From positions 186,001-250,000 of the IMG/VR virus record IMGVR_UViG_3300031951_000003: a stretch of DNA of 64,000 nucleotides. One strand, written 5' to 3'. A program made the position numbers and the translations under genes. The notes beneath the pieces were generated by a model. It was not told the origin of the DNA, made no database searches, and worked only from the letters and a program-made list of their open reading frames with translations. This document shows positions 30,719 through 60,808 of this stretch, one piece after another; the stretch's first letter is position 1, and each line of letters begins with the position of its first letter.

Positions 30719-30750
30719 CAAAAATAAGAAATGTTCTTTTTTTTCCCAAA
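30719..30750 (-). promoter_or_regulatory. Bacteroidota sigma-A promoter
   Basis: Minus strand TTTG-N20-TATTTTTG. Confidence 0.7.
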
Positions 30751-31940: not shown

Positions 31941-32097
31941 TAAAAAAAATAAATTTGGTTATATCATAAATACTTCGGACCTTTGTTATGTCTGAAGCGG
32001 GAGTGTATGGACGGGCTGGGGAATAACCCTTGGAGCTGAATCAGAGGTAGCTTGCTTATACCCCATGGATAAGATTTCTTTTGGTGGAATGAAATAA

Positions 32098-32514
32098 TTG
32101 TCGTATCTTTGCCTTATGTTATATCTTAAAACCCCGACCATCACGATGACCACCCCATATATTAGGGACGTGGTTGGTGAGACCATTATGTGGTGTGAGA
32201 AGAACATGGGAAAAAAAAGGAAGAGGACCAAACTTAAGTTTAGGGTTCTGACTCAGACCCATGGGGAAAATTGTTATGGGATGTATGACCCCAAAAAGAA
32301 TACCATCATCGTCCACAGAAATATGTGTCAGTCGGTGAGAGATGTGGTGAAGGTTGTCATTCATGAGTATACCCATTTTCTTCAGGACCTTCGTGGATAT
32401 TCGAAGGTATTAAGGGAAGTTGGATATAGAAGACACCCACAAGAAGTTGAGGCGAGGGGGAATGAAAAATTGTTTTCGAAATGTTGGACCGATATAAAAA
32501 ATAACTTATGTTAA
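32098..32514 (+). CDS. HEXXH zinc metallopeptidase-like protein
   Basis: VVIHEYTHFLQ...HPQEVEA. Confidence 0.7.
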   Translation: MSYLCLMLYLKTPTITMTTPYIRDVVGETIMWCEKNMGKKRKRTKLKFRVLTQTHGENCYGMYDPKKNTIIVHRNMCQSVRDVVKVVIHEYTHFLQDLRGYSKVLREVGYRRHPQEVEARGNEKLFSKCWTDIKNNLC

Positions 32515-40205: not shown

Positions 40206-40387
40206 TCTTTTTTCTCCTTATTCGTAATTTTGAAATTACAAACCCGCTTTCCATTGATTGTTGGCATACCAAATTCATCAACACCGATTGTCTTGACCGT
40301 GGTTCTTCTATTTCTAAATCTACCCGTGTAAATTATATCACCAACCTTAATCGGAATAAAAATTCCTGTTTGTTTCTTATCACTCAT
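40202..40387 (-). CDS. Small hypothetical protein
   Basis: ORF track; last gene of the umuD-umuC run. Confidence 0.5.
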   Translation of the reverse strand: MSDKKQTGIFIPIKVGDIIYTGRFRNRRTTVKTIGVDEFGMPTINGKRVCNFKITNKEKKD

Positions 40388-41001
40388 ATTTTTGGTTCAT
40401 AACCCAATTTATCAAAATACCAACGATTTTTTTCGTATAAGTATTCAATCATATCATCTGTATAACATTCTTTTAAATCCAACTCCCTGTGGGACTCATT
40501 TTTGAGTTTTCCACAAAGCTCTTTCAATAAACCTGATTTGGAAAGATTACTATCTGATATGAATGGAATTTTTACGTAATCTTCATATAAACTCTCGGTT
40601 CTGACATAAAAATCAGGAACTCTAGGAACTTCGACAGTCCCTGAAAGAAAATAATCAAATGATGTGCTCCTGATGTAATTCGAAAAAAATTCCTTGAATC
40701 CTTTTGGACTGATTTCCTTAACTTGGTTTTGGAATTTGTAGGCTGAGACCAATCTTGTGAGTGGGTTTCTAGCCGTGCAAATGAGAGAGTAGTTTTCGTG
40801 ACCGTCAAACAAATCCGTGTTGTGGAAATGACCTGGAAAATTGGATTTCCTCTTAACTTCAGACCTATCTGAACTGCACTCCATGAAAGTGAAAGGTAGA
40901 CAACTGAATACTGTTACCGCATGGTGTGAACCTGTTTTGGGTGGTGTCCAAAGAAATGATTTCATTTCCTCAGATATATTTAACAATTTAGTTGTTCTCA
41001 T
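40384..41001 (-). CDS. Sulfotransferase family 2-like protein
   Basis: PPKTGS, TARNPLTRLVSAY, DFYVRTESL. Confidence 0.75.
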   Translation of the reverse strand: MRTTKLLNISEEMKSFLWTPPKTGSHHAVTVFSCLPFTFMECSSDRSEVKRKSNFPGHFHNTDLFDGHENYSLICTARNPLTRLVSAYKFQNQVKEISPKGFKEFFSNYIRSTSFDYFLSGTVEVPRVPDFYVRTESLYEDYVKIPFISDSNLSKSGLLKELCGKLKNESHRELDLKECYTDDMIEYLYEKNRWYFDKLGYEPKI

Positions 41002-41003
41002 TG

Positions 41004-41588
41004 TCAGAATGGATAATCATAGTTTAACATACTACAGTAGTCTTGAGAACAGGAAAAAATAATATCTTTGATTTCCTGAGTGAAATATTTGTCAACGTCA
41101 TTTATGACATCGGTATCATTATCTTTAATAGAACATAAATTTCTAATTTGAACTAATTTATCGAAATCGGAATTTGCTATGAAAGGTATTTTATTGTAAT
41201 CATCATAAAGATTTTCGATTCTGATAAAATAATCCGGAGTCCTTTCCTTAAATGGCCAAATTATACATCTCAATGTTGTTTTAGGAAAGTTCATATAAAA
41301 ATAGTTCTGAAAACTTTCAGGACTCCAAATATTCGGATTTTTGTGATTAAATTTATAAAAAGATAAAATTCTTGAAAATGGATTTCGAGCCGTAGATAAA
41401 AAAATATAATCTTTGTGTCCGCTTGGATAATCGAAGGAATGGTTATTGTTTAACGGGATTACTTTCAAACCATCAGGCGTTTTTTTGTAAGTTGAAAATC
41501 CGTAGTTTTTCAAAACTTTTACACAATGAACCGAACCTGTTCTAGCTTGTAACCAAACAAATGATTTATTAATTTCTGATATGTTCAT
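41004..41588 (-). CDS. Sulfotransferase family 2-like protein
   Basis: [28 protein letters not shown]. Confidence 0.7.
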
Positions 41589-42793
41589 ACGAAAACTTTG
41601 GGTATTTCATCCCAAGATGTGGTATACTTTTGGGACATGAAATCTTGTCTCATCTCCCACTCTTTTTTTTTGTTTATGGGTGCCTGAACTAACTGTATTG
41701 AAGTTGTAAATAAAGTGGGTTGTTCTATATTCTCGGGCATAAGTTCATTAAATATAATTCCACATTTTTTATAATTCTTACTTGAGTTATAAATTTTCTT
41801 TAAGTGTGGATATACCTGGCTCCATATTTCATCCACATCTCTTGTTTGTTTTTGAAATGTAATCTGTTTACTCGAGTAATGTTTTTCACCTTTATGAACA
41901 TTTCCACTTAAAAATATGGTTGCTCGGTTTGGTGATATTTCATTATCAATAAGTTTTTTCACCCCGTTTTTAATATATGTATACATGGCCTCAGATAATT
42001 GATTAAAATCATTTACGTCTTGTCCGAATGACCTTGTTGATGCTATGTTCTTTTTTAACTTTGGTAATGGTTTTACAGGATGACAATACATACCAAGAAG
42101 TTCACACTTTGTTCTAAGTCCATTTACATTCATCATTTTTCTGACAATACTATCAGACATCATAACAAATTGACCAACACTCTCAACTCCTAAGTTTTTT
42201 AATTTTTTATTCCACTGTCTACCAATACCCCAAACCTCATCTACAGATATTGTGTAAAGTGATTCCCTAAAATCATGCAAACTCCAATATGAACAAACAC
42301 CATCGTATGATTGTTGTTGTTTGGCTATATGTGATGTAAGTTTGGCTAATGTCTTATTTGGACCGACACCTATTGAAACAGGAACTCCTGTAAGTCTTTT
42401 AACCTCATTACGAATAAGATGTAATCTATCTAAAAGTTCATCATCGGGTATATTAGAAAAATCCACAAAACACTCATCAATAGAATAGACCTCAACTTCT
42501 TTAGCATACTTCTTTATGGTTGTCATGACTCTGTCTGACATATCTCCATACAAGTTATAGTTTGATGAATAAACACAGAATCTATGTTCTTCCATGAAGT
42601 CTTTTTTCATAAAGAAAGGTTCACCCATTTTGATTCCAAGGGCTTTGGCTTCTTGAGAGCGGGCAATAACACAACCATCGTTGTTAGATAAAACAACTGT
42701 AGGTCTCCCAATGGAGATTGGATTGAAAACTCTTTCACAACTAACGTAAAAATTGTTACAATCTACAATACCGATTTTTTTATTGGACTGCAT
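41585..42793 (-). CDS. umuC: Y-family DNA polymerase V catalytic subunit
   Basis: [42 protein letters not shown]-terminal [16 protein letters not shown]. Confidence 0.93.
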
Positions 42794-43160
42794 TTTTATC
42801 TATTTTAGGTTTTCCGTGTGGTTTTGGTTTTCCATTCTCATCTAAATTAACAAAAACAATTTTGTCAATTTTGATTACAGATTGTTTTGTCATTTTGTTT
42901 CTAACATCACACGCAATTGTAATTGAGGTATTTCCAACATTAATCAGTTCCATACCAAATTCCACTATATCACCTACCACTGCGGTTGAAACAAAATTTA
43001 TTTCACTCATCGCTTTGGTTACAATGTTTCTTTCTCCTAATTGACAGACAGCAAATATTGCAGCCTCTTCGTCAATCCACTTTAAAACTTGTCCTCCAAA
43101 TAATGTTCCCCTAGCATTCAAATCACTCGGTTTAATTAACTTTCTTGTTCTATATTTCAT
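42780..43160 (-). CDS. Hotdog-fold acyl-CoA thioesterase
   Basis: [24 protein letters not shown]. Confidence 0.88.
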
Positions 43161-43726
43161 TTTTTTAAATCTCCTCTTACATCTGATTTTACTTTATCGA
43201 GATAGACCAATCTCTCATTTTGACTCACGAATGGAACACTCCAAAACTGACGTGTCTTTGTTCTGAACCAACCAAAAACAAATGAATAAACCCCCATTAC
43301 TAATCTTAGTTTAACTGAGTTTAGATATAAAGTAAGGACGGGTAATGATGGTGCACCATGAGTCAAATAAGTTCGAACCTTTTTATCCTTCAACAAAGGT
43401 TTTGGATATCCGTATTTTTTTGTGACTGGTATGAACTTGTATGCAAACCCTGGTGTGAATATTTGGTCAAAGAACGCCTCTAACATTGGTGTTGTCCTAA
43501 ACCACCAAACAGGAGATATGAAATATATTCTATCTGTCCATGTAATTAAGTCTTTATATTCCCTAACTTTATCTTTACCAAAATCAAATGTCTTGTTTTC
43601 CGCATAGAGGTCTACAATATAGAAATCTTCTTTATTAGATTCTAAGGTATCTGCAATTGTTTTTTGTATTCCGTTGTAACAAAAACTCTGTTTGTCAGGA
43701 TGTGCAATGATAATTAAATTCTTCAT
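43157..43726 (-). CDS. Flavodoxin-fold NAD(P)H-dependent oxidoreductase
   Basis: IIIAHPDKQSF; SPVWWFRTTPMLEAFFDQIFTPGFAY. Confidence 0.88.
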   Translation of the reverse strand: MKNLIIIAHPDKQSFCYNGIQKTIADTLESNKEDFYIVDLYAENKTFDFGKDKVREYKDLITWTDRIYFISPVWWFRTTPMLEAFFDQIFTPGFAYKFIPVTKKYGYPKPLLKDKKVRTYLTHGAPSLPVLTLYLNSVKLRLVMGVYSFVFGWFRTKTRQFWSVPFVSQNERLVYLDKVKSDVRGDLKK

Positions 43727-43727
43727 C

Positions 43728-44045
43728 TTATAACTTGTTTAAAATCCAAGAGACTCTCCCCCAAACATTCTCTTGTCCTTCGTATTTTCTAATTTTAAAA
43801 TGGTCTTTCTCTGTGAGGACAACTAACTCACCTTCTGTAGGGTCAATAGAACGGTCTATGACGAGGATATTTCCTGTCTTGACTCCAAGTGTGTTTGGAC
43901 CCATATAACGGAAATAAAAGGTCGTATACGTGTTCTGAATGATTAAATCATTGAGGTCTAAACGTTTGTCTACATAAGATTCGGCGGGAGATGCAAATCC
44001 TGTTGTTCTTGACTTAATATTTAACTCTTTCGCAGTTGTATTCAC
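43728..44045 (-). CDS. umuD: UmuD-like S24 protein lacking catalytic residues
   Basis: GFASPAESYVDKRLDLNDLII...LVIDRS; GDSM replaced by GPNT and VKK by IRK; GTG start. Confidence 0.8.
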   Translation of the reverse strand: MNTTAKELNIKSRTTGFASPAESYVDKRLDLNDLIIQNTYTTFYFRYMGPNTLGVKTGNILVIDRSIDPTEGELVVLTEKDHFKIRKYEGQENVWGRVSWILNKL

Positions 44046-44049
44046 GATA

Positions 44050-44080
44050 CAAAAATAGTAAAATATTTTGTATCTTCAAA
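44050..44080 (-). promoter_or_regulatory. Bacteroidota sigma-A promoter of the umuD operon
   Basis: TTTG-N19-TATTTTTG. Confidence 0.7.
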
Positions 44081-44091
44081 TATATTGTCTA

Positions 44092-44709
44092 TTAAAATAT
44101 CTCTCCTATGAGAACTTGTGGTTTGATTCCCATCGCAGCTGCAGTGCAAAGTCTTGTGTTACCAGCAACTAAATGGAATCTGTCACCAAATTTGAGTATT
44201 AGTGGTCTTTTGTAGTCACCACTTTGAAGGGCTTTTTTCAACTCTCGTGGGTCTTGTTTGTTATACTTTTTTGCAAGAGCCATTACTTTTTTCATCTCAC
44301 CTTTTTTGATTTGATTACATTCCGTATTTTCAAGATTGTTCCAAACCTCGTCGGGTATTTTAACTTCGATGGCGTTGTCTAATGCACGATAAACATCTTC
44401 GACAGATATATCGATATTTTCGTCTCTATTCAAATCTTGAACTACTCTTTCTATTTCGTCCATTTCTGACTTCAAGTATCTTTTCCTTCTCTCCATAAAA
44501 TAGTTGACCTCATTTCTTAGGTCATCAAAATCTGAAATGCCAGCATCATAGACGTAATCTTCTAAGTCTTTGAATTTGTTAAATTTCAAATGTTTGAGGA
44601 GCTCAGGATGTTTTTTCACGTCATCAAGAAATTCCTGAACACCTGAAGAATCAGGTGATAACTCATTTATGAGTCTTTTAATTCTTAATATTTGTTCACG
44701 TAAAATCAC
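44092..44709 (-). CDS. Leader-C-like protein with ParB/Srx-like domain
   Basis: MILREQILRIKRLINE; RPLIL...HLVAGNTRLCTA. Confidence 0.6.
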   Translation of the reverse strand: MILREQILRIKRLINELSPDSSGVQEFLDDVKKHPELLKHLKFNKFKDLEDYVYDAGISDFDDLRNEVNYFMERRKRYLKSEMDEIERVVQDLNRDENIDISVEDVYRALDNAIEVKIPDEVWNNLENTECNQIKKGEMKKVMALAKKYNKQDPRELKKALQSGDYKRPLILKFGDRFHLVAGNTRLCTAAAMGIKPQVLIGEIF

Positions 44710-45107
44710 TCTCCGAATATTTTTTTTATATGTTGAGGAAATTGTTTTTGAAACTTTTTCAAAAAGACGGATGATAGAACACTCGCCATATTTTCTTCAG
44801 GACCTCCAATATCTTGTATAGGTTCATCCTCAGGAACACCCATTGACTGATGTTGATATTCGTGAACCCATTCATGGGCTAACGTCCTTAAAATATCAAT
44901 TAAAAGTCTACCTTTACAAAGAACAAAAATCTCACTTTCGGGCATTCTAACACCTGTTGTCATATTTTCATTTCTCTCATTTTCAAAATGAATATGAACG
45001 TCTTTTTTTAATTTCAATTCATCTTGTAATAACTGACAAAAATCCTTAATTACATCAATTGAATCCGATAAATTTGATTTTGATATGTTTTTGAGACAAA
45101 CTTTCAT
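44706..45107 (-). CDS. HEXXH metallopeptidase-like protein
   Basis: RTLAHEWVHEYQH...EENMA; start moved to MKVCLK below TATTTAT. Confidence 0.65.
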   Translation of the reverse strand: MKVCLKNISKSNLSDSIDVIKDFCQLLQDELKLKKDVHIHFENERNENMTTGVRMPESEIFVLCKGRLLIDILRTLAHEWVHEYQHQSMGVPEDEPIQDIGGPEENMASVLSSVFLKKFQKQFPQHIKKIFGE

Positions 45108-45329
45108 GTAAATAAATATCCATGAAAGGGAAAGGTCAGGGAGAAAGTTCAAAAATCAAAAAGTTATATGAATTTTGATTGGATGAGGGTTGGTCTGTTT
45201 TTGAATACTTGAGATTTGAATCTTGATTAAACAAAATCTTCATCGGATATCACATACTATAATTGTTGCTGGTTGACATGAAGCCAACTATCTCTCTGAT
45301 TTTATCACAATCCCACCCGACCTTATAAC

Positions 45330-45799: not shown

Positions 45800-46906
45800 T
45801 TAGTCAAGTTGCTTAACCAAATTTAACGCTTGTGCAATTATTTGGTGCATGTCGTAATAAACGTATGTTGCTAATCTACCACCAAAATAATAATTTGGTA
45901 AATCATTCGTCAATTCTTTATACTTTTCGTAAATTAGGGTATTTCTATCGTCTCTTATTGGATAGTAAGGTTCATTCTCACCATTATAATCTGCAGGGAA
46001 TTCATAACTAATAATTGTTCCTTTTTGATTTTGTGGGTCAAACCACTTATGTTCTAATATTCTTGTGTATGGTGTTTCTCGGTCAGTATAGTTAACCACG
46101 GGAACCCCTTGAAAATTATCTTTTTCCAAACGTTTTGTTTCCCATTCCAAACTTCTATATTCTAAATTTCCATAAAGGTAGTCAAAAAATCTATCTATGG
46201 GACCTGTGTAGATTACCTTTTGAGCTAGCGAATCATGATATAACTTCGATTCGAAGTAGTCTACCCCTAATTCAACATCACATTTCTGTAACATCTTTTC
46301 AAATATTTGAGTATAACCTCCAATTGGCATCCCTGTATATTTGTCATTGAAGTAATTACTATCCCAAGTAAACCTTAAAGGTAATCTTTTGATAATTGAC
46401 GGGGGTAGTTCCTGACAGTTTTTGTTCCATTGTTTTTCAGTATATCCCTTGATGAGTTTCTGATAAATTTCATCACCCACCATTGACATTGCCTGTTCTT
46501 CGAGATTGGTTATCTTTCCCTTATATTTAATCTCCTCAATAATTTGTTTCGCTCTTTCAGGTTCGTTGACTTTCCAAAGTTGATTGAATGTCCACATGTT
46601 GAATGGTAATGTAAACATTTCGCCCTTGTAGTTCGCAATTACATTATGTGTGTATTGTCTAAACTCGGCAAATTGATTCACGTAATCCCAAATATGTTTG
46701 TCGTTGGTATGGAAAATATGTGCACCATATTTGTGAACGTGAATACCGTCCACGTTTTCAGTATAACAGTTTCCACCTATTACAGGTCTTTTATCAATTA
46801 CCAAACATTTTTTTCCTTTCTTAGTTAGTTCGTAAGCACAAACGGAACCGAATGGTCCCGCCCCTACTATCAAATAATCATATTTTGGAAAATTCAATAA
46901 AATCAT
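45800..46906 (-). CDS. glf: UDP-galactopyranose mutase
   Basis: YDYLIVGAG, HKYGAHIFHT, YRSL, EPYYP, GRLATYVYYDMHQ. Confidence 0.95.
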   Translation of the reverse strand: MILLNFPKYDYLIVGAGPFGSVCAYELTKKGKKCLVIDKRPVIGGNCYTENVDGIHVHKYGAHIFHTNDKHIWDYVNQFAEFRQYTHNVIANYKGEMFTLPFNMWTFNQLWKVNEPERAKQIIEEIKYKGKITNLEEQAMSMVGDEIYQKLIKGYTEKQWNKNCQELPPSIIKRLPLRFTWDSNYFNDKYTGMPIGGYTQIFEKMLQKCDVELGVDYFESKLYHDSLAQKVIYTGPIDRFFDYLYGNLEYRSLEWETKRLEKDNFQGVPVVNYTDRETPYTRILEHKWFDPQNQKGTIISYEFPADYNGENEPYYPIRDDRNTLIYEKYKELTNDLPNYYFGGRLATYVYYDMHQIIAQALNLVKQLD

Positions 46907-48057
46907 TTGAAATCAAAATTGAAACTTTCAGAATCAATAACATGTTCCTCAGTTTTTCTTGTCAATCTCTCTTTGTATTCAACAAGAAAATTCCCTGTGT
47001 TGGTATAAGCCCTACTTTCAATTAAAAAGGATTTGACAGGGAAAGGGTTTTTTCTTTCAGGTTCCATCATCTTGTCGATTACCTGAATTGCTTCTTGAGT
47101 TTTACCTAATGAATCATAATGGAATGCAAGATAAAGTAAGTTTTCATTTCTATCTTTACTAAACTCGCTCGCTAACTTGAAAACCTCCTCGGCTTTCGCA
47201 TGTTCACCCAAGAAATCATAAGACCATCCCATAACAATCAAACCAAAGTAAGCCATCTCATCTTCATATTTTGGTTTTTTCTCAACACCCCAAACATGTG
47301 TCAATTCCATGAATCTTTCATAATACCACAAAGACCTTCTAGCATATTCTTCTGAGTGTTTTCTTCCGAAAGGTAATTCGCTCGAGTTCCCATAACAATC
47401 AGCATAACTCTTAGCAATATACCAAAGGTGATAGTAATCTTCATGAACCTTGTTTCCTACAACTTTATCAATTTCCAGTTCGAGTGCATCTCTTAAAAAC
47501 TTTCTTGGTGCCGCCCAAGTATCACCATCTTGTGAAACGATGTGTCTGAGCCCATAGGGCATGTTAATTCTTTGAAAATCTTCACCAATTTCAGGAAGAT
47601 GAATTGTTTCGTGTCTTTTGTCGTGTGCAAAAAACCAAGGTAATTTAGCATTCCAAAACCAAGTTCTGAAATAATTTGTATCGCCGGCTTGTGCTGCAAT
47701 ATTGTAACTTTGTATTTGTGTGTTTTCTAAAATTGACCAATCGAAATCTGAATCAACATGAAGGGTCTCATCCGCATCCATCCTCAAAACCCAGTCACAA
47801 CCATGTTCTGATGAAAGACATTTTTGTAGGGTATGGTCTCTATTCCAACCAGGAAAATTCCAATCGATTTTATAAGTGAAACCTGGAATGTTTTTGGTTT
47901 GAAAAAAAACATTAATTTTGGACTCTGTGTCATCGTTTCCATTACATTGGATTACATAGTAATCAATATAAGGTGCCACTGATTCTAACATTCTCATGAT
48001 GGTTTTGGATTCATTTCCAACCATCGAGTTCAATACAATTTTTGCTTTCTTATTCAT
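46903..48057 (-). CDS. GT2-like glycosyltransferase with TPR-like C-terminus
   Basis: NESKTIMRML; WVLRMDADE (DxD); RHETIH; helical repeats. Confidence 0.75.
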   Translation of the reverse strand: MNKKAKIVLNSMVGNESKTIMRMLESVAPYIDYYVIQCNGNDDTESKINVFFQTKNIPGFTYKIDWNFPGWNRDHTLQKCLSSEHGCDWVLRMDADETLHVDSDFDWSILENTQIQSYNIAAQAGDTNYFRTWFWNAKLPWFFAHDKRHETIHLPEIGEDFQRINMPYGLRHIVSQDGDTWAAPRKFLRDALELEIDKVVGNKVHEDYYHLWYIAKSYADCYGNSSELPFGRKHSEEYARRSLWYYERFMELTHVWGVEKKPKYEDEMAYFGLIVMGWSYDFLGEHAKAEEVFKLASEFSKDRNENLLYLAFHYDSLGKTQEAIQVIDKMMEPERKNPFPVKSFLIESRAYTNTGNFLVEYKERLTRKTEEHVIDSESFNFDFK

Positions 48058-49297
48058 AAGTGTAGTTCATTACTCCTTCTTCGTCGAAGTATTTTTTTAT
48101 TGGAACGTGGTTTTGAAATTTGTGGGAGTGTCCTCTCTCTTCATTCCAATACCAATCATCGAAACCAAGCTCTTTGATTCTATCATGAATCCTTTTGTCG
48201 TAGTGGTCTCTGATTAATCTCGCCCTTCTGTTTATATCATAAGCATTGTTATCAACAGTGCTATTACGATTGTTGTATTGTAAGTATAACATTCTTTTCA
48301 CGTGAATAAACCTTGTATGTAAGAATGTTCTGACAATCATTTCAAAGTCATCGGCTACCGGGGTTAGTTTGTTGTGACCACCGAGTTCATGATAGAGCTT
48401 TCTTTCCCACATTCTTATGTGGTCGGGCATTGAGATGTTGAAACGGATTGTCAATGGATTGATATCTGGATACCAATGTGCCAGATACTTTTGTCCATCA
48501 GCATAAACCCACGAGTGTCCTGCATAACCGAAGTCAAAAAAGTTATCAGGTCTAGCATACCAATTACCTGACCAATCATGGTCATAAGACTTCATTTCAC
48601 CATCATCGTATAACTCACATACATCAGTATACAAGAAACCAGCATCAGGGTATTTTTCGATTGCGTCATTACAAACCTCCAAACAATCACTTATGAGTGC
48701 ATCATCGTGGTCCAATTCACAAAGCCAATCTCCATCACACAACATAGCCGCCCTGTTTTTAGCTAACCCTACATTACCCCCTGAAGTGGGATATATTTTG
48801 TGTATCTTTACTCTGTAATCAATGTTCGAAAATTCCTTCAACAAGTTCCAAGTCTCGTCATCTGGCGAATCATCAACAACAACCCATTCCCAATTTGTGA
48901 ATGTTTGATTCTTCAAACTTTCATAAGTTCTCCTTATTCTCTCTCCTGTTTTATATGTTGGTGTAAAAATTGAGAATCTCGGTCTTTGATAGTCAGTATT
49001 TTTGAATACCGTTTGACAAACAACTATGTTTGCTAAAACGTTATCCTGAGGTAAGAATTCGTAATGAACATGTTTTTGTTTTAAGAAATAATGAGGAACT
49101 TCGATTTCATCTATAAAGGACAGGATAACATCAGGTTGATATTTCGTATAATCCCCCGCCACATCATTGGTATAGGGTAATGCATAAATGGTGACTTCAT
49201 CATAAAGTCTTTCCTCGAAGTAAATATCAGATTCTAAAATGAATTTCCCTGTGGAAACCCAACCGTAAACTATCGCACTAGGTTTTTTTGTCTTCAT
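48050..49297 (-). CDS. GT2 glycosyltransferase
   Basis: FSIFTPTYK, WEWVVVDDS, ELDHDD, ADDFEM. Confidence 0.88.
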   Translation of the reverse strand: MKTKKPSAIVYGWVSTGKFILESDIYFEERLYDEVTIYALPYTNDVAGDYTKYQPDVILSFIDEIEVPHYFLKQKHVHYEFLPQDNVLANIVVCQTVFKNTDYQRPRFSIFTPTYKTGERIRRTYESLKNQTFTNWEWVVVDDSPDDETWNLLKEFSNIDYRVKIHKIYPTSGGNVGLAKNRAAMLCDGDWLCELDHDDALISDCLEVCNDAIEKYPDAGFLYTDVCELYDDGEMKSYDHDWSGNWYARPDNFFDFGYAGHSWVYADGQKYLAHWYPDINPLTIRFNISMPDHIRMWERKLYHELGGHNKLTPVADDFEMIVRTFLHTRFIHVKRMLYLQYNNRNSTVDNNAYDINRRARLIRDHYDKRIHDRIKELGFDDWYWNEERGHSHKFQNHVPIKKYFDEEGVMNYTYE

Positions 49298-59311: not shown

Positions 59312-59343
59312 CAAATATAAGACACAAACCCTATTATGCCAAA
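59312..59343 (-). promoter_or_regulatory. Bacteroidota sigma-A promoter (followed by a TATTTAT motif)
   Basis: TTTG-N20-TATATTTG, then TATTTATAGATATG. Confidence 0.7.
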
Positions 59344-60599
59344 AGTTTTTTTCCTGCTCTTTCTCTATGAAACTTTATTGCAAACCTGTGAACCTCTTCT
59401 TGAATAACTCCGAGAACGGACCAATCCATTGGATGTTGTTTACCATCAGTTGTATGAACGGTCTGTGACCTGTGTTTTTGGTCTTTCGAAATTGATATCA
59501 AATCAATCCTGTTGGTAAGTCCAAGAGACTCAAATACCTTCTTTGCAACGTTTAATTGACCAATTCCCCCATCAATTAGAACAAGGTCAGGTAGTTGACC
59601 CTTTTCATCCAAGAGTCTCTTAAAACGTCTGTAAACCACTTCCTCGAATGACAGACAATCATTACCATTGTTTGACTCCTCACGAATGATATACTTACGG
59701 TATTCACTCTTGAGAGGTTTGTTATTCACATATCTTACAGAGGCCGCAACATTTGAGTCACCCTGATTGTGTGAGTTGTCAAACGCCTCGATAATCAAAG
59801 GAAGATTTTTAAGACCCAAAACCTTTTTTATACCAAAGGCAATCTTGTTATATTTCCTTACACGGATGGGTTCGAGTTTCTCTTCAAGTTTTTTGATTTG
59901 ATTAACCCTGTTGAGGTAGTTGTCCGCCTTTTCGAACTCCAAGTTCTTGGCAAACTCATGCATTTTTCCTGTGAGAAACACCTTTAACATCTTATAATCA
60001 AGTTCGAATATCTTTCGAACAATTAATTGATACTTCAGATATTCAAGGTTCGATTCCAAGGCAATGCAGGGTGCGTTACAACGACCAATATGATACTCAA
60101 GACATGGTTTGAATTTACCTGCCCCGATGTTTTCTTGATTCAAAGTATAGGAACAAGTTCTAAGTGGAAGGATGTCGTTGATAAGTTCCATAACTTCATA
60201 CGCCCTTTGACCTGAGGTGAAGTTGATTCCACAGGTGTCCTCACCTTTCCCATGAGTTATTTGAAGTTTGGAGTATGGTCCACCAGTCAAAGACAAATGC
60301 CAAGTTCTTGACTTATCATCTTTACCTTTGATGTTGAACTTGGGTTTGTAAATTTTGATGAGTTCTTCCTCCATGATGAGAGCCTCAGCCTCAGATGAAG
60401 CAATCTGATACTCAACGTCACGTATTTGTTCAACAAGGGTCCTTGTCTTCTTGTCATCGTGTTTCTTATTGAAATAAGACGCAACACGTTTGGGAAGGAA
60501 CTTGGACATCCCCACATATATTACCTGGTCTTTGCCATCTTTGTAGATGTAACAACCAGGGTATTTGGGAGCTGATTTTATTTTTTCTTTGATGTCCAT
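59334..60599 (-). CDS. uvrC: UvrC-like excinuclease lacking the C-terminal HhH domain
   Basis: PGCYIYKD...IYVG; CLEYHIGRCNAPC; IEAFDNSH; PDLVLIDGG; EVHRFAI; start moved to MDIKEK. Confidence 0.88.
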   Translation of the reverse strand: MDIKEKIKSAPKYPGCYIYKDGKDQVIYVGMSKFLPKRVASYFNKKHDDKKTRTLVEQIRDVEYQIASSEAEALIMEEELIKIYKPKFNIKGKDDKSRTWHLSLTGGPYSKLQITHGKGEDTCGINFTSGQRAYEVMELINDILPLRTCSYTLNQENIGAGKFKPCLEYHIGRCNAPCIALESNLEYLKYQLIVRKIFELDYKMLKVFLTGKMHEFAKNLEFEKADNYLNRVNQIKKLEEKLEPIRVRKYNKIAFGIKKVLGLKNLPLIIEAFDNSHNQGDSNVAASVRYVNNKPLKSEYRKYIIREESNNGNDCLSFEEVVYRRFKRLLDEKGQLPDLVLIDGGIGQLNVAKKVFESLGLTNRIDLISISKDQKHRSQTVHTTDGKQHPMDWSVLGVIQEEVHRFAIKFHRERAGKKLLA

Positions 60600-60808
60600 T
60601 CTTTTCTGTGTTTGTAAAACCAATAGGAGTGAATGATGATAACGCACGAATTTACAACAATTGTCGGACCTGCCGAAATTCCGAATCCATAAACTAACCA
60701 AAAAATTGCGCCAACCGTGTTGACCGCTCTAAGACGGAAAACGTCCTCAATTAGGAATGAACCTAAAATGAGGACGCTCCCGATATATCCATATATTTCC
60801 CACATCAT
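60578..60808 (-). CDS. Small inner-membrane protein (YgjV-like)
   Basis: Three TM segments; RLRAVNTVGAIFWLVYG. Confidence 0.6.
   Translation of the reverse strand: MMWEIYGYIGSVLILGSFLIEDVFRLRAVNTVGAIFWLVYGFGISAGPTIVVNSCVIIIHSYWFYKHRKEWTSKKK

What the first reader, a model, noticed from the sequence alone, without database searches (positions are those of the whole stretch)
43728..44045. UmuD homologue that has lost both catalytic residues
Seen, by alignment to E. coli UmuD: G-D-S60-M becomes G-P-N-T, F-T-V-K97-K becomes F-K-I-R-K, the scissile C24-G25 becomes T-G, the N-arm is only ~15 aa, and C-terminal strands are deleted. Established: Pol V activation needs RecA*-stimulated Ser-Lys autocleavage to UmuD'. 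Inference: either a pre-activated RecA-cleavage-independent partner giving constitutive phage mutagenesis (which would feed cassette diversification), or a dominant-negative brake on Pol V.
Basis: partly seen in the sequence, partly recalled or inferred. Interest (0 to 1): 0.6.

Follow-up and report, generated by a model that had tools for sequence, protein, structure and literature searches.

The report
Phage UmuD-like subunit without protease residues
A freshwater jumbo phage carries its own error-prone repair polymerase (UmuC) together with a shortened UmuD-like helper that cannot cut itself, and the polymerase also lacks its RecA-binding motif, so the pair probably works without the host's DNA-damage alarm.

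Summary
Window 43728-44045 (-) encodes a 105-aa UmuD homologue. PDB UmuD' matches at E 5e-11, and the model aligns to it with Z 10.7. Ser60 has become N51, Lys97 has become R86, and the Cys24-Gly25 cleavage site has become T15-G16. About 24 internal residues are deleted, but the last strand is kept.

This is a conserved family of uncultured phages, not a decayed copy. More than 337 protein clusters were found. None of 121 aligned members has both Ser and Lys. The Ser column is hypervariable, while the N-arm is invariant.

In every related locus with enough sequence, the gene sits directly before umuC. Only this phage lineage has two genes inserted between them. A complex model supports binding to UmuC (0.73, best control 0.01) with the architecture published for Pol V.

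A new point is that the partner UmuC keeps its catalytic residues, clamp motif and UmuD'-binding tail, but has lost the RecA-binding half of DUF4113. No SOS box lies upstream.

Best reading: a non-proteolytic, cleavage-independent and probably RecA-independent accessory subunit of a phage Pol V-like translesion polymerase (confidence 0.55). The conserved, uncleavable 15-residue N-terminal stub keeps a "brake" role open. It is a new variant of a known kind, of moderate interest.

The parts
43728..44045 (-). umuD-like gene, 105 aa, GTG start. It has the S24/UmuD' fold without the Ser-Lys dyad.
43998..44003 (-). Codons T15-G16, the position of the UmuD Cys24-Gly25 cleavage site. In the family it reads TG in 115 members and SG in 6.
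43941..44000 (-). Codons G16-I35, the N-terminal arm (GFASPAE.YV..RLDLN..I). This is the most conserved stretch of the protein and corresponds to the UmuD' arm that inserts into UmuC.
   Evidence: in the complex model residues 21, 25-29 and 34 of copy 2 touch UmuC
43893..43895 (-). Codon N51 at the Ser60 nucleophile position. It is hypervariable in the family (D/N/E/S/K/T).
43788..43790 (-). Codon R86 at the Lys97 general-base position. In the family it is R in 117 members, K in 3 and C in 1; it is G or D in distant members.
44050..44080 (-). Bacteroidota-type promoter-like site, TTTG-N19-TAnnTTTG, ending 4 nt before the GTG start. The -7 box at the same 4-5 nt spacing recurs in nearly all related loci.
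44046..44074 (.). Perfect 9-bp inverted repeat (GATACAAAA-N11-TTTTGTATC) overlapping the promoter. It is unique in the genome and not conserved in relatives, so it is probably not an operator.
41585..42793 (-). umuC, 402 aa, a Y-family polymerase. Catalytic D11 and S104-I105-D106-E107 are invariant in the family.
41708..41722 (-). UmuC Q358-F362 (QPTLF), a beta-clamp-type QxxLF motif. Q358, L361 and F362 are invariant.
41660..41707 (-). Short UmuC linker (residues 363-378) in the place where bacterial UmuC carries the RecA-NT-like motif. About 21 residues are missing.
   Evidence: motif defined in PMC6511836
41588..41659 (-). UmuC C-terminal tail (residues 379-402, the second half of DUF4113), the predicted binding site for the UmuD-like protein.
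   Evidence: PMC11791011
43157..43726 (-). Flavodoxin-like-fold NAD(P)H oxidoreductase gene inserted between the umuD-like gene and umuC. Found in this lineage only.
42780..43160 (-). 4HBT-family thioesterase gene inserted between the umuD-like gene and umuC. Found in this lineage and in L014.

Best explanation
The gene encodes a non-proteolytic UmuD'-type accessory subunit of a phage-encoded, Pol V-like translesion DNA polymerase.

Proposed mechanism:
- The S24 domain is kept only as a scaffold. It takes up the C-terminal tail of the phage UmuC.
- Its invariant N-terminal arm inserts into UmuC, as modelled for E. coli UmuD'2C.
- No self-cleavage occurs or is needed. The Ser-Lys dyad, the acidic RecA*-docking patch and a beta-hairpin have been lost.
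- The partner UmuC has in parallel lost its RecA-binding (RecA-NT) motif, while keeping its catalytic residues, clamp-binding motif and UmuD'-binding tail.
- The pair is transcribed from a host-type (Bacteroidota) promoter without a known SOS box.

The phage would therefore make a lesion-bypass polymerase whose assembly does not wait for host RecA*/SOS signalling. This would help it replicate UV-damaged DNA in sunlit fresh water.

Shown: homology, fold, loss of the residues, selection, synteny, loss of the UmuC motif.
Inferred: binding (in silico only), polymerase activity, RecA independence, the biological benefit.
For: Homology and fold:
- PDB UmuD' E 5e-11; PHROG 811 E 9e-20.
- The AF2 core has pLDDT above 90. 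Its best structural matches are UmuD' at TM 0.66 and Z 10.7, rmsd 2.5 A, 83 aligned residues.

The dyad is lost across the family while the rest is constrained:
- Column 51 is D56/N47/E8/S7; column 86 is R117/K3/C1; no member has both Ser and Lys.
- The arm G16-N32 is invariant, with synonymous codon variation.

Partner:
- umuC follows directly in all 33 IMG/VR loci whose downstream DNA reaches a umuC match, and in the metagenome loci L001, L004 and L006. Identity to the window tracks between the two genes.
- UmuC catalytic residues and the QxxLF motif are invariant.

Complex model of UmuC plus two copies:
- ipSAE 0.73, best control 0.01. In calibration this mark was reached by 58 of 80 solved complexes and 2 of 110 mismatched pairs.
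- The runs share at least 66% of their contacts; partner pLDDT is at least 75.
- UmuC 389-402 lies on copy 1 and the arm of copy 2 lies on UmuC. This is the architecture published for Pol V (PMC11791011, PMC12926913).

RecA links lost:
- UmuD D91/E93, needed for RecA*-stimulated cleavage (PMC9926225), are K80 and H82 here (C or H in most of the family).
- The phage-family UmuC matches only positions 22-28 to 51 of the 51-position DUF4113 profile. Bacterial UmuC matches positions 2-51. The alignment shows a gap of about 21 residues. That half of the profile is the RecA-NT motif (PMC6511836).

Regulation and precedent:
- No other S24 gene is present in the complete 321-kb genome.
- No Bacteroidetes SOS box lies upstream (motifs from PMC8565304).
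- The GenBank record of phage P1 annotates HumD, which begins at the Gly25 equivalent, as functionally complementing UmuD'.
- Independent dyad-less UmuD-likes in bacteria also sit beside umuC.
Against: - The 15 residues before G16 are retained. Residues 8-15 are conserved (I10 and T14 invariant), so the protein is not simply 'pre-cleaved'.
- In E. coli, uncleavable UmuD with a 17-residue stub is almost non-mutable, and one with a 7-residue stub is only weakly active (PMC5342242).
- The complex model does not place residues 1-20 with confidence. It is also a prediction for a family whose complex architecture may be remembered by the model.
- E. coli Pol V is nearly inactive without RecA-ATP, so a UmuC without RecA-NT might be a poor polymerase.
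- Dimerisation of the shortened domain was not tested.
- There are no expression data: no RNA run holds the locus.
Confidence: 0.55

Rival explanations
1. It acts as a permanent 'UmuD-state' manager or brake. Because the 15-residue stub cannot be removed, the protein holds the phage UmuC in a restrained, non-mutagenic state. That could mean stabilising it, limiting its access to the fork, or slowing replication, as uncleaved UmuD2C does in E. coli.
For: - The stub is conserved in length and in residues 8-15.
- Uncleavable E. coli UmuD variants with stubs of 17 or 7 residues give little mutagenesis (PMC5342242).
- In the published Pol V model the free N-terminus of UmuD' lies next to the UmuC active site (PMC11791011), so an extension could interfere.
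Against: - A polymerase with invariant catalytic and clamp-binding residues across 61-100% identity would not be kept if it were permanently switched off.
- The E. coli clamp-related TFPLF segment of the UmuD arm is absent.
- The features that let UmuD dock on RecA* are gone.
Confidence: 0.2
2. It is a pro-form activated in trans. Another protease (a host UmuD or LexA-like S24 enzyme, or a phage or host protease) would cut at or near T15-G16 and release a UmuD'-like product.
For: - UmuD cleaves intermolecularly (PMC9926225).
- UmuD 18 cleaves the arms of UmuD S60A in heterodimers (PMC5342242).
- G16 and the hydroxyl residue before it are conserved.
- A small HExxH protein with a weak IrrE/M78-like signal lies two genes upstream.
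Against: - Thr, not Ala or Cys, occupies P1.
- The genome has no other S24 gene.
- In two near-complete related genomes the HExxH homologue lies far from the umuD-like gene and is part of a roughly 720-aa ORF, so there is no specific linkage.
- The RecA*-docking residues are lost.
Confidence: 0.1
3. It targets the host rather than the phage polymerase. It would heterodimerise with host UmuD/UmuD', or bind host replisome parts, to damp or redirect host SOS mutagenesis.
For: - In E. coli, UmuD and UmuD' form heterodimers that inactivate UmuD' (my own knowledge, not checked here).
- The arm motif GFASPAE is shared with Cytophagales and Prevotella UmuD.
Against: - The gene is always coupled to the phage's own umuC and diverges in step with it.
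- The complex model with the phage UmuC passes its controls.
Confidence: 0.07

Closest known systems
E. coli UmuD / UmuD' (Pol V accessory subunit, peptidase family S24)
   Same: - Homologous sequence and fold.
- Conserved arm GF(P/A)SPA..Y...R.DLN.
- Gene placed directly before umuC.
- Predicted to take the UmuC C-terminal tail on one copy and to insert the arm of the other copy into UmuC (PMC11791011).
   Different: - No Ser60 or Lys97.
- Thr instead of Cys at P1.
- A 15-residue rather than 24-residue N-terminal segment that cannot be self-removed.
- About 24 internal residues deleted.
- The acidic RecA*-docking patch D91/E93 is replaced.
- No LexA-type box upstream.
Phage P1 HumD (and N15 gp26, phiKO2 gp23)
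   Same: A phage-encoded UmuD-like protein that needs no cleavage. The record notes that HumD complements UmuD'. It is 32% identical over 74 residues.
   Different: - HumD begins exactly at the Gly25 equivalent and still has the Asp-Ser and Lys positions.
- It is 129 aa and keeps the hairpin.
- It sits behind a LexA site and works with the host UmuC; P1 carries no umuC next to it.
Engineered uncleavable E. coli UmuD variants (S60A, K97A, UmuD 8 S60A, UmuD 18)
   Same: An intact N-terminal segment that cannot be removed. Stub lengths of 17 and 7 residues bracket the 15 residues here.
   Different: Those variants are largely non-mutable or only weakly active (PMC5342242). The phage protein is a naturally selected form that has co-evolved with its own UmuC.
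YolD/YqjX small subunits of Gram-positive UmuC-like polymerases
   Same: A small, non-proteolytic accessory protein encoded next to a UmuC-like polymerase, predicted to insert an N-terminal arm (PMC6511836, PMC12926913).
   Different: A different, non-homologous family: no PF08863 hit was found. Their polymerases keep the RecA-NT motif.

Membership tests
Peptidase S24 (LexA/UmuD) as a homologous fold | Significant sequence and structural similarity to the S24 catalytic domain | tested here: met
   PDB UmuD' E 5e-11; PHROG 811 E 9e-20; VIA Z 10.7. The Pfam score of 22.3 is just under the 23.3 cut-off.
Peptidase S24 as an active autopeptidase | Ser nucleophile and Lys general base (UmuD S60/K97) | tested here: not met
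   N51 and R86 in this protein. No family member has both Ser and Lys.
Peptidase S24 as an active autopeptidase | Ala/Cys-Gly scissile bond | tested here: not met
   T15-G16 here; across the family TG in 115 members and SG in 6. Only the Gly is kept.
Peptidase S24 as an active autopeptidase | RecA*-stimulated self-cleavage | not testable with these tools
   Indirect evidence only: the docking residues D91/E93 are replaced by K80 and H82 (PMC9926225).
UmuD'-type Pol V accessory subunit | Encoded in an operon with umuC | tested here: met
   Directly upstream of umuC in all informative related loci. Here it is separated from umuC by two inserted genes on the same strand.
UmuD'-type Pol V accessory subunit | Conserved N-terminal arm required for Pol V function | tested here: met
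   G16-N32 is invariant or nearly invariant.
UmuD'-type Pol V accessory subunit | Binds the UmuC C-terminal tail | tested here: inconclusive
   In silico only: ipSAE 0.73 against a best control of 0.01. UmuC 389-402 contacts copy 1.
UmuD'-type Pol V accessory subunit | Homodimer (UmuD'2) | not tested
   Two copies were given to the complex model, but contacts between the two copies are not reported.
UmuD'-type Pol V accessory subunit | Free N-terminus at the Gly25 equivalent | tested here: not met
   15 coded and conserved residues precede G16.
Pol V mutasome (UmuD'2C-RecA-ATP) | RecA-NT motif in UmuC for RecA binding | tested here: not met
   DUF4113 is matched only from profile position 22-28 onward in the phage family, against positions 2-51 in bacterial UmuC. 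The alignment gap is shown.
HumD-like pre-truncated UmuD' | Translation starts at the Gly25 equivalent | tested here: not met
   HumD starts MGFPSPA. This protein has 15 more residues.
YolD/YqjX | PF08863 domain | tested here: not met
   No hit in the Pfam scan at E up to 0.01.

The most novel reading that the evidence does not exclude
Jumbo phages of freshwater Bacteroidota carry a self-contained, two-gene Pol V that has cut every known tie to RecA. There would be no UmuD cleavage, no RecA* docking patch and no RecA-NT motif in UmuC. The conserved but uncleavable 15-residue N-terminal stub (h8-x-I10 ... T14-T15-G16) would take over regulation by a non-proteolytic route, for example by gating the UmuC active site or responding to the phage's own UvsX-like recombinase.
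Probability: 0.25. Interest if true: 0.65.

Novelty: new variant of a known kind. Interest (0 to 1): 0.5.

Why it matters
Pol V is the textbook case of a mutagenic polymerase held in check by RecA at two steps: UmuD cleavage and RecA-ATP transfer to UmuC. This phage family looks like a natural experiment in which both steps have been removed while the polymerase, the clamp motif, the UmuD' arm and the UmuC tail stay under selection.

If the pair is active, three things follow:
- It separates the scaffold role of UmuD' from its protease ancestry.
- It gives a minimal system for structural work on Pol V.
- It shows that abundant lake phages bring their own SOS-independent lesion bypass, with consequences for phage survival under UV and for phage mutation rates.

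If the pair is inactive until something removes or moves the stub, it points to a new activation route.

Tried and rejected
- Inverted repeat at 44046-44074 as an operator. It is unique in the 321-kb genome and not conserved in the nearest relative L014 or in others. I dropped it as an operator; it overlaps a promoter-like site.
- Known Bacteroidetes SOS boxes (CTAA-N5-TTAG, GGA-N5-TCC; PMC8565304). None lies near the gene, and window counts are at chance level.
- An alternative dyad. K84 is two residues before R86 and nearly invariant among close members, but it is Thr or Ile in L040 and L038. There is no conserved Ser in the G49-L53 loop.
- The HExxH ORF at 44706-45152 as a dedicated processing protease. 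The only signal is a feature-based lead to IrrE/M78, and there is no Pfam hit. In two near-complete related genomes the homologue lies far from the umuD-like gene.
- AF2 arm behaviour as a test of free versus docked arm. The arm is disordered in the phage protein, but it is equally disordered in a canonical bacterial UmuD control, so the result is uninformative.
- Expression and transcription start. No RNA run holds the locus.
- The large representative search was not run.
- McLenigan et al. 1999 on HumD (PMC94175) is not held. HumD function is cited from the GenBank record note.
- Bacterial genomes. No close relative was found in 185,579 species; the best match is 42% identical. The 'Flavobacteriaceae MAG' label on P0075 therefore most likely marks a binned phage contig; its context includes an Acb1-family gene and many small ORFs.

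Full report
**Setting**

The window is bases 186001-250000 of a single 321,139-bp virus record. It has direct terminal repeats, is rated complete, is 35% G+C, and carries 24 tRNA genes and a tmRNA. It is therefore a jumbo phage.

Near-identical DNA occurs in lake, freshwater and other ('fungus'-labelled) metagenomes from 15 studies. No RNA run holds it.

Promoter-like sites of the Bacteroidota type (TTTG-N17-21-TAnnTTTG) occur 53 times in the genome, against 18 in the reversed sequence. The arm motif GFASPAE is shared with Cytophagales and Prevotella UmuD. From these two points I infer a Bacteroidota host; this is an inference.

**The observation**

ORF 43728-44045 (-) has a GTG start and encodes 105 aa. 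It aligns to E. coli UmuD'/UmuD with E 5e-11 to 7e-11.

In that alignment:
- G-D-S60-M is G49-P50-N51-T52.
- F-T-V-K97-K is F83-K84-I85-R86-K87.
- C24-G25 is T15-G16.

PHROG 811 'UmuD-like protein' matches at 9e-20. Pfam Peptidase_S24 scores 22.3 bits, just under its 23.3 cut-off.

An AlphaFold2 model built on 60 family members has pLDDT above 90 for residues 40-100 and a disordered arm. Its best structural matches are UmuD': Foldseek TM 0.66, and VIA Z 10.7, rmsd 2.5 A, 83 residues aligned, model 20-105 to UmuD' 32-138.

The 'deleted C-terminal strands' are an internal deletion of about 24 residues (UmuD about 101-126), and the last strand is kept.

**A selected family, not a decayed copy**

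The word search found 337 protein clusters, nearly all 105 aa and 67-96% identical among those listed. In an alignment of 121 sequences:
- The Ser60 column reads D56/N47/E8/S7.
- The Lys97 column reads R117/K3/C1.
- No sequence has both Ser and Lys.

More distant phage members have K, T or S at column 51, and G or D at column 86.

By contrast, T14, G16, F17, S19-E22, Y24, V25, R28, L29 and N32 are invariant. They are encoded by varying synonymous codons, as are I10 and T14 in the stub.

The 15-residue stub is therefore translated and constrained at positions 8-15. Positions 2-7 and the old nucleophile position are free to vary.

**The partner**

In this window the gene heads a same-strand run with touching or overlapping ends:
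- the umuD-like gene;
- a flavodoxin-like-fold oxidoreductase (43157-43726);
- a 4HBT thioesterase (42780-43160);
- umuC (41585-42793);
- two sulfotransferase-like genes.

IMG/VR returned 39 related loci. In all 33 where the downstream DNA reaches a umuC match, and in the three metagenome loci tested, umuC follows at once. The identities of the two genes to the window fall together.

The two inserted genes occur only in the window's own lineage. L009-L013 are identical to the window in all eight proteins compared; two of them come from 317-321-kb contigs. L014 has the thioesterase alone.

The UmuC family keeps D11, S104-I105-D106-E107 and Q358..L361-F362 invariant.

**Predicted complex**

UmuC plus two copies of the small protein gave ipSAE 0.73, against a best control of 0.01. 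In calibration this mark was reached by 58 of 80 solved complexes and 2 of 110 mismatched pairs. The runs agree in at least 66% of contacts, and partner pLDDT is at least 75. The model supports binding but does not show it.

Contacts in the model:
- UmuC 389-402, plus 25-26, 79-92 and 133-136, lie against residues 40-53, 60-66 and 76-85 of one copy.
- Residues 21, 25-29 and 34 of the other copy's arm touch UmuC.

This is the published in-silico architecture of Pol V. There the UmuC C-terminus adds a strand to one UmuD', and the arm of the other UmuD' enters between palm and little finger with its N-terminus near the active site (PMC11791011, PMC12926913).

Residues 1-20 are not placed with confidence.

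**Both RecA links are gone**

In the RecA*-UmuD structure, UmuD Y52, L54, F94 and F18 form the pocket for RecA loop L2. D91 and E93 face a basic patch, and charge reversal there impairs cleavage (PMC9926225). Here the aromatic positions are kept (F43, F45, F83), but D91 is K80 and E93 is H82, which is C or H in most of the family.

Independently, the UmuC of this family has lost the RecA-NT-like motif:
- Pfam DUF4113 is matched only from profile positions 22-28 to 51, at 33-39 bits. This holds in the window and in four divergent relatives.
- Four bacterial UmuC proteins match from position 2 or 6 to position 48-51, at 44-73 bits.
- The alignment shows a gap of about 21 residues exactly there.

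That part of DUF4113 was shown to be homologous to the RecA N-terminal oligomerisation motif. It carries the residues that cross-link to RecA (PMC6511836, PMC11791011).

The genome has no second S24 gene. It does encode a UvsX-like recombinase and a gp32-like SSB.

**Regulation**

The 46-nt spacer upstream holds TTTG-N19-TATTTTTG, ending 4 nt before the GTG. A TAnnTTTG-like box at 4-5 nt from the start codon recurs in nearly all related loci. Seven such promoter-start pairs at exactly 4 nt exist in the genome. This suggests leaderless or near-leaderless messages read by host-type RNA polymerase.

The two SOS boxes known for Bacteroidetes are absent (PMC8565304). The perfect inverted repeat at 44046-44074 is unique to this phage and not conserved.

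**Interpretation**

The simplest account is a non-proteolytic UmuD'-type subunit of an active phage translesion polymerase that needs neither UmuD cleavage nor the RecA-NT contact.

Supporting precedents:
- P1 HumD starts at the Gly25 equivalent and is recorded as complementing UmuD', yet it keeps its Ser and Lys.
- Independent dyad-less UmuD-likes sit beside umuC in a Desulfohalobiaceae MAG, a Parafilimonas MAG (also pre-truncated) and a Dojkabacteria MAG (also 105 aa with the same deletion).

The main difficulty is the conserved, unremovable stub. In E. coli, UmuD 8 S60A (17-residue stub) is nearly non-mutable, and UmuD 18 (7-residue stub) is only weakly active (PMC5342242). A restraining role, or activation by another protease, therefore stays open.

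I tried to test arm docking with AF2, but a canonical UmuD control behaved the same as the phage protein.

My confidences are:
- 0.55 for the cleavage-independent active subunit;
- 0.20 for a brake or manager;
- 0.10 for trans-activation;
- 0.07 for a host-directed role.

**Novelty**

UmuD-like genes in phages, and uncleaved or pre-cleaved forms, are known. I found no description in the held literature of a natural UmuD family without the dyad, paired with a UmuC without RecA-NT. Those searches are not exhaustive.

I rate it a new variant of a known kind, with interest 0.5.

Noticed in passing
window 42780-43726 (-): A flavodoxin-like-fold NAD(P)H oxidoreductase gene and a 4HBT acyl-CoA thioesterase gene are inserted between the umuD-like gene and umuC. 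The pair occurs only in this phage lineage. L014 has the thioesterase alone, and all more distant relatives have neither.
   Followed up: partly
window 44050-44080 (-); also 32080-32111 (+) and 30719-30750 (-): Bacteroidota-type promoter consensus TTTG-N17-21-TAnnTTTG ending exactly 4 nt before a start codon. There are 7 such cases in the genome, and 53 full matches against 18 in the reversed-sequence control. This suggests a class of leaderless or near-leaderless phage messages.
   Followed up: partly
window 59334-60701 (-): A 455-aa protein with a GIY-YIG domain and a UvrC RNase H endonuclease domain (E 4e-43). This is a UvrC-like excision-repair nuclease encoded by the phage and a second DNA-damage gene in the window.
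   Followed up: no
G000:C1 about 30.4-32.3 kb (L060:802-2711, outside the window): Adjacent UvsX-like recombinase (333 aa, PHROG 97) and gp32-like SSB (285 aa, acidic tail). The phage has its own recombinase, which might replace RecA for the polymerase.
   Followed up: partly
window 44706-45152 (-): A 148-aa ORF with an HExxH motif. A feature search points weakly to IrrE/Peptidase_M78-like proteins (0.95, 179 shared features). In two related jumbo genomes the homologous domain sits in a roughly 720-aa ORF far from the umuD-like gene.
   Followed up: partly
window 44092-44709 (-): A 205-aa ORF with no family hit. It is conserved with the HExxH ORF in several related phages (58-68% identity). 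It lies directly upstream of the umuD-like gene only in the nearest relatives and 1.6-5 kb upstream in the others.
   Followed up: no
L047:5980-6210 and L046:5980-6333: Two broken natural copies. In L047 the first half of the umuD-like gene runs straight into the last residues of UmuC, which is an internal deletion of both genes. L046 loses the frame after residue 73 or so.
   Followed up: no
L048, L058, L059 (bacterial MAG contigs): UmuD-like genes next to umuC that have independently lost Ser and Lys: Desulfohalobiaceae (A and R at the two positions), Parafilimonas (starts at the Gly25 equivalent; A and R) and Dojkabacteria (105 aa with the same internal deletion). L053 keeps Ser but has Arg for Lys.
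   Followed up: partly
window 40384-41588 (-) and 45800-49297 (-): Two paralogous sulfotransferase-like genes (32% identical) lie directly after umuC. Upstream lie a UDP-galactopyranose mutase, a GT2 glycosyltransferase and an unassigned 384-aa gene. Together these look like a glycan-modification cluster around the repair genes.
   Followed up: no
G000:C1 1-340 and 320795-321139: The genome ends overlap within a long imperfect repeat coding Pro/Glu/Asp/Val-rich units. The tRNA genes (24) and a tmRNA cluster at 125-161 kb.
   Followed up: no
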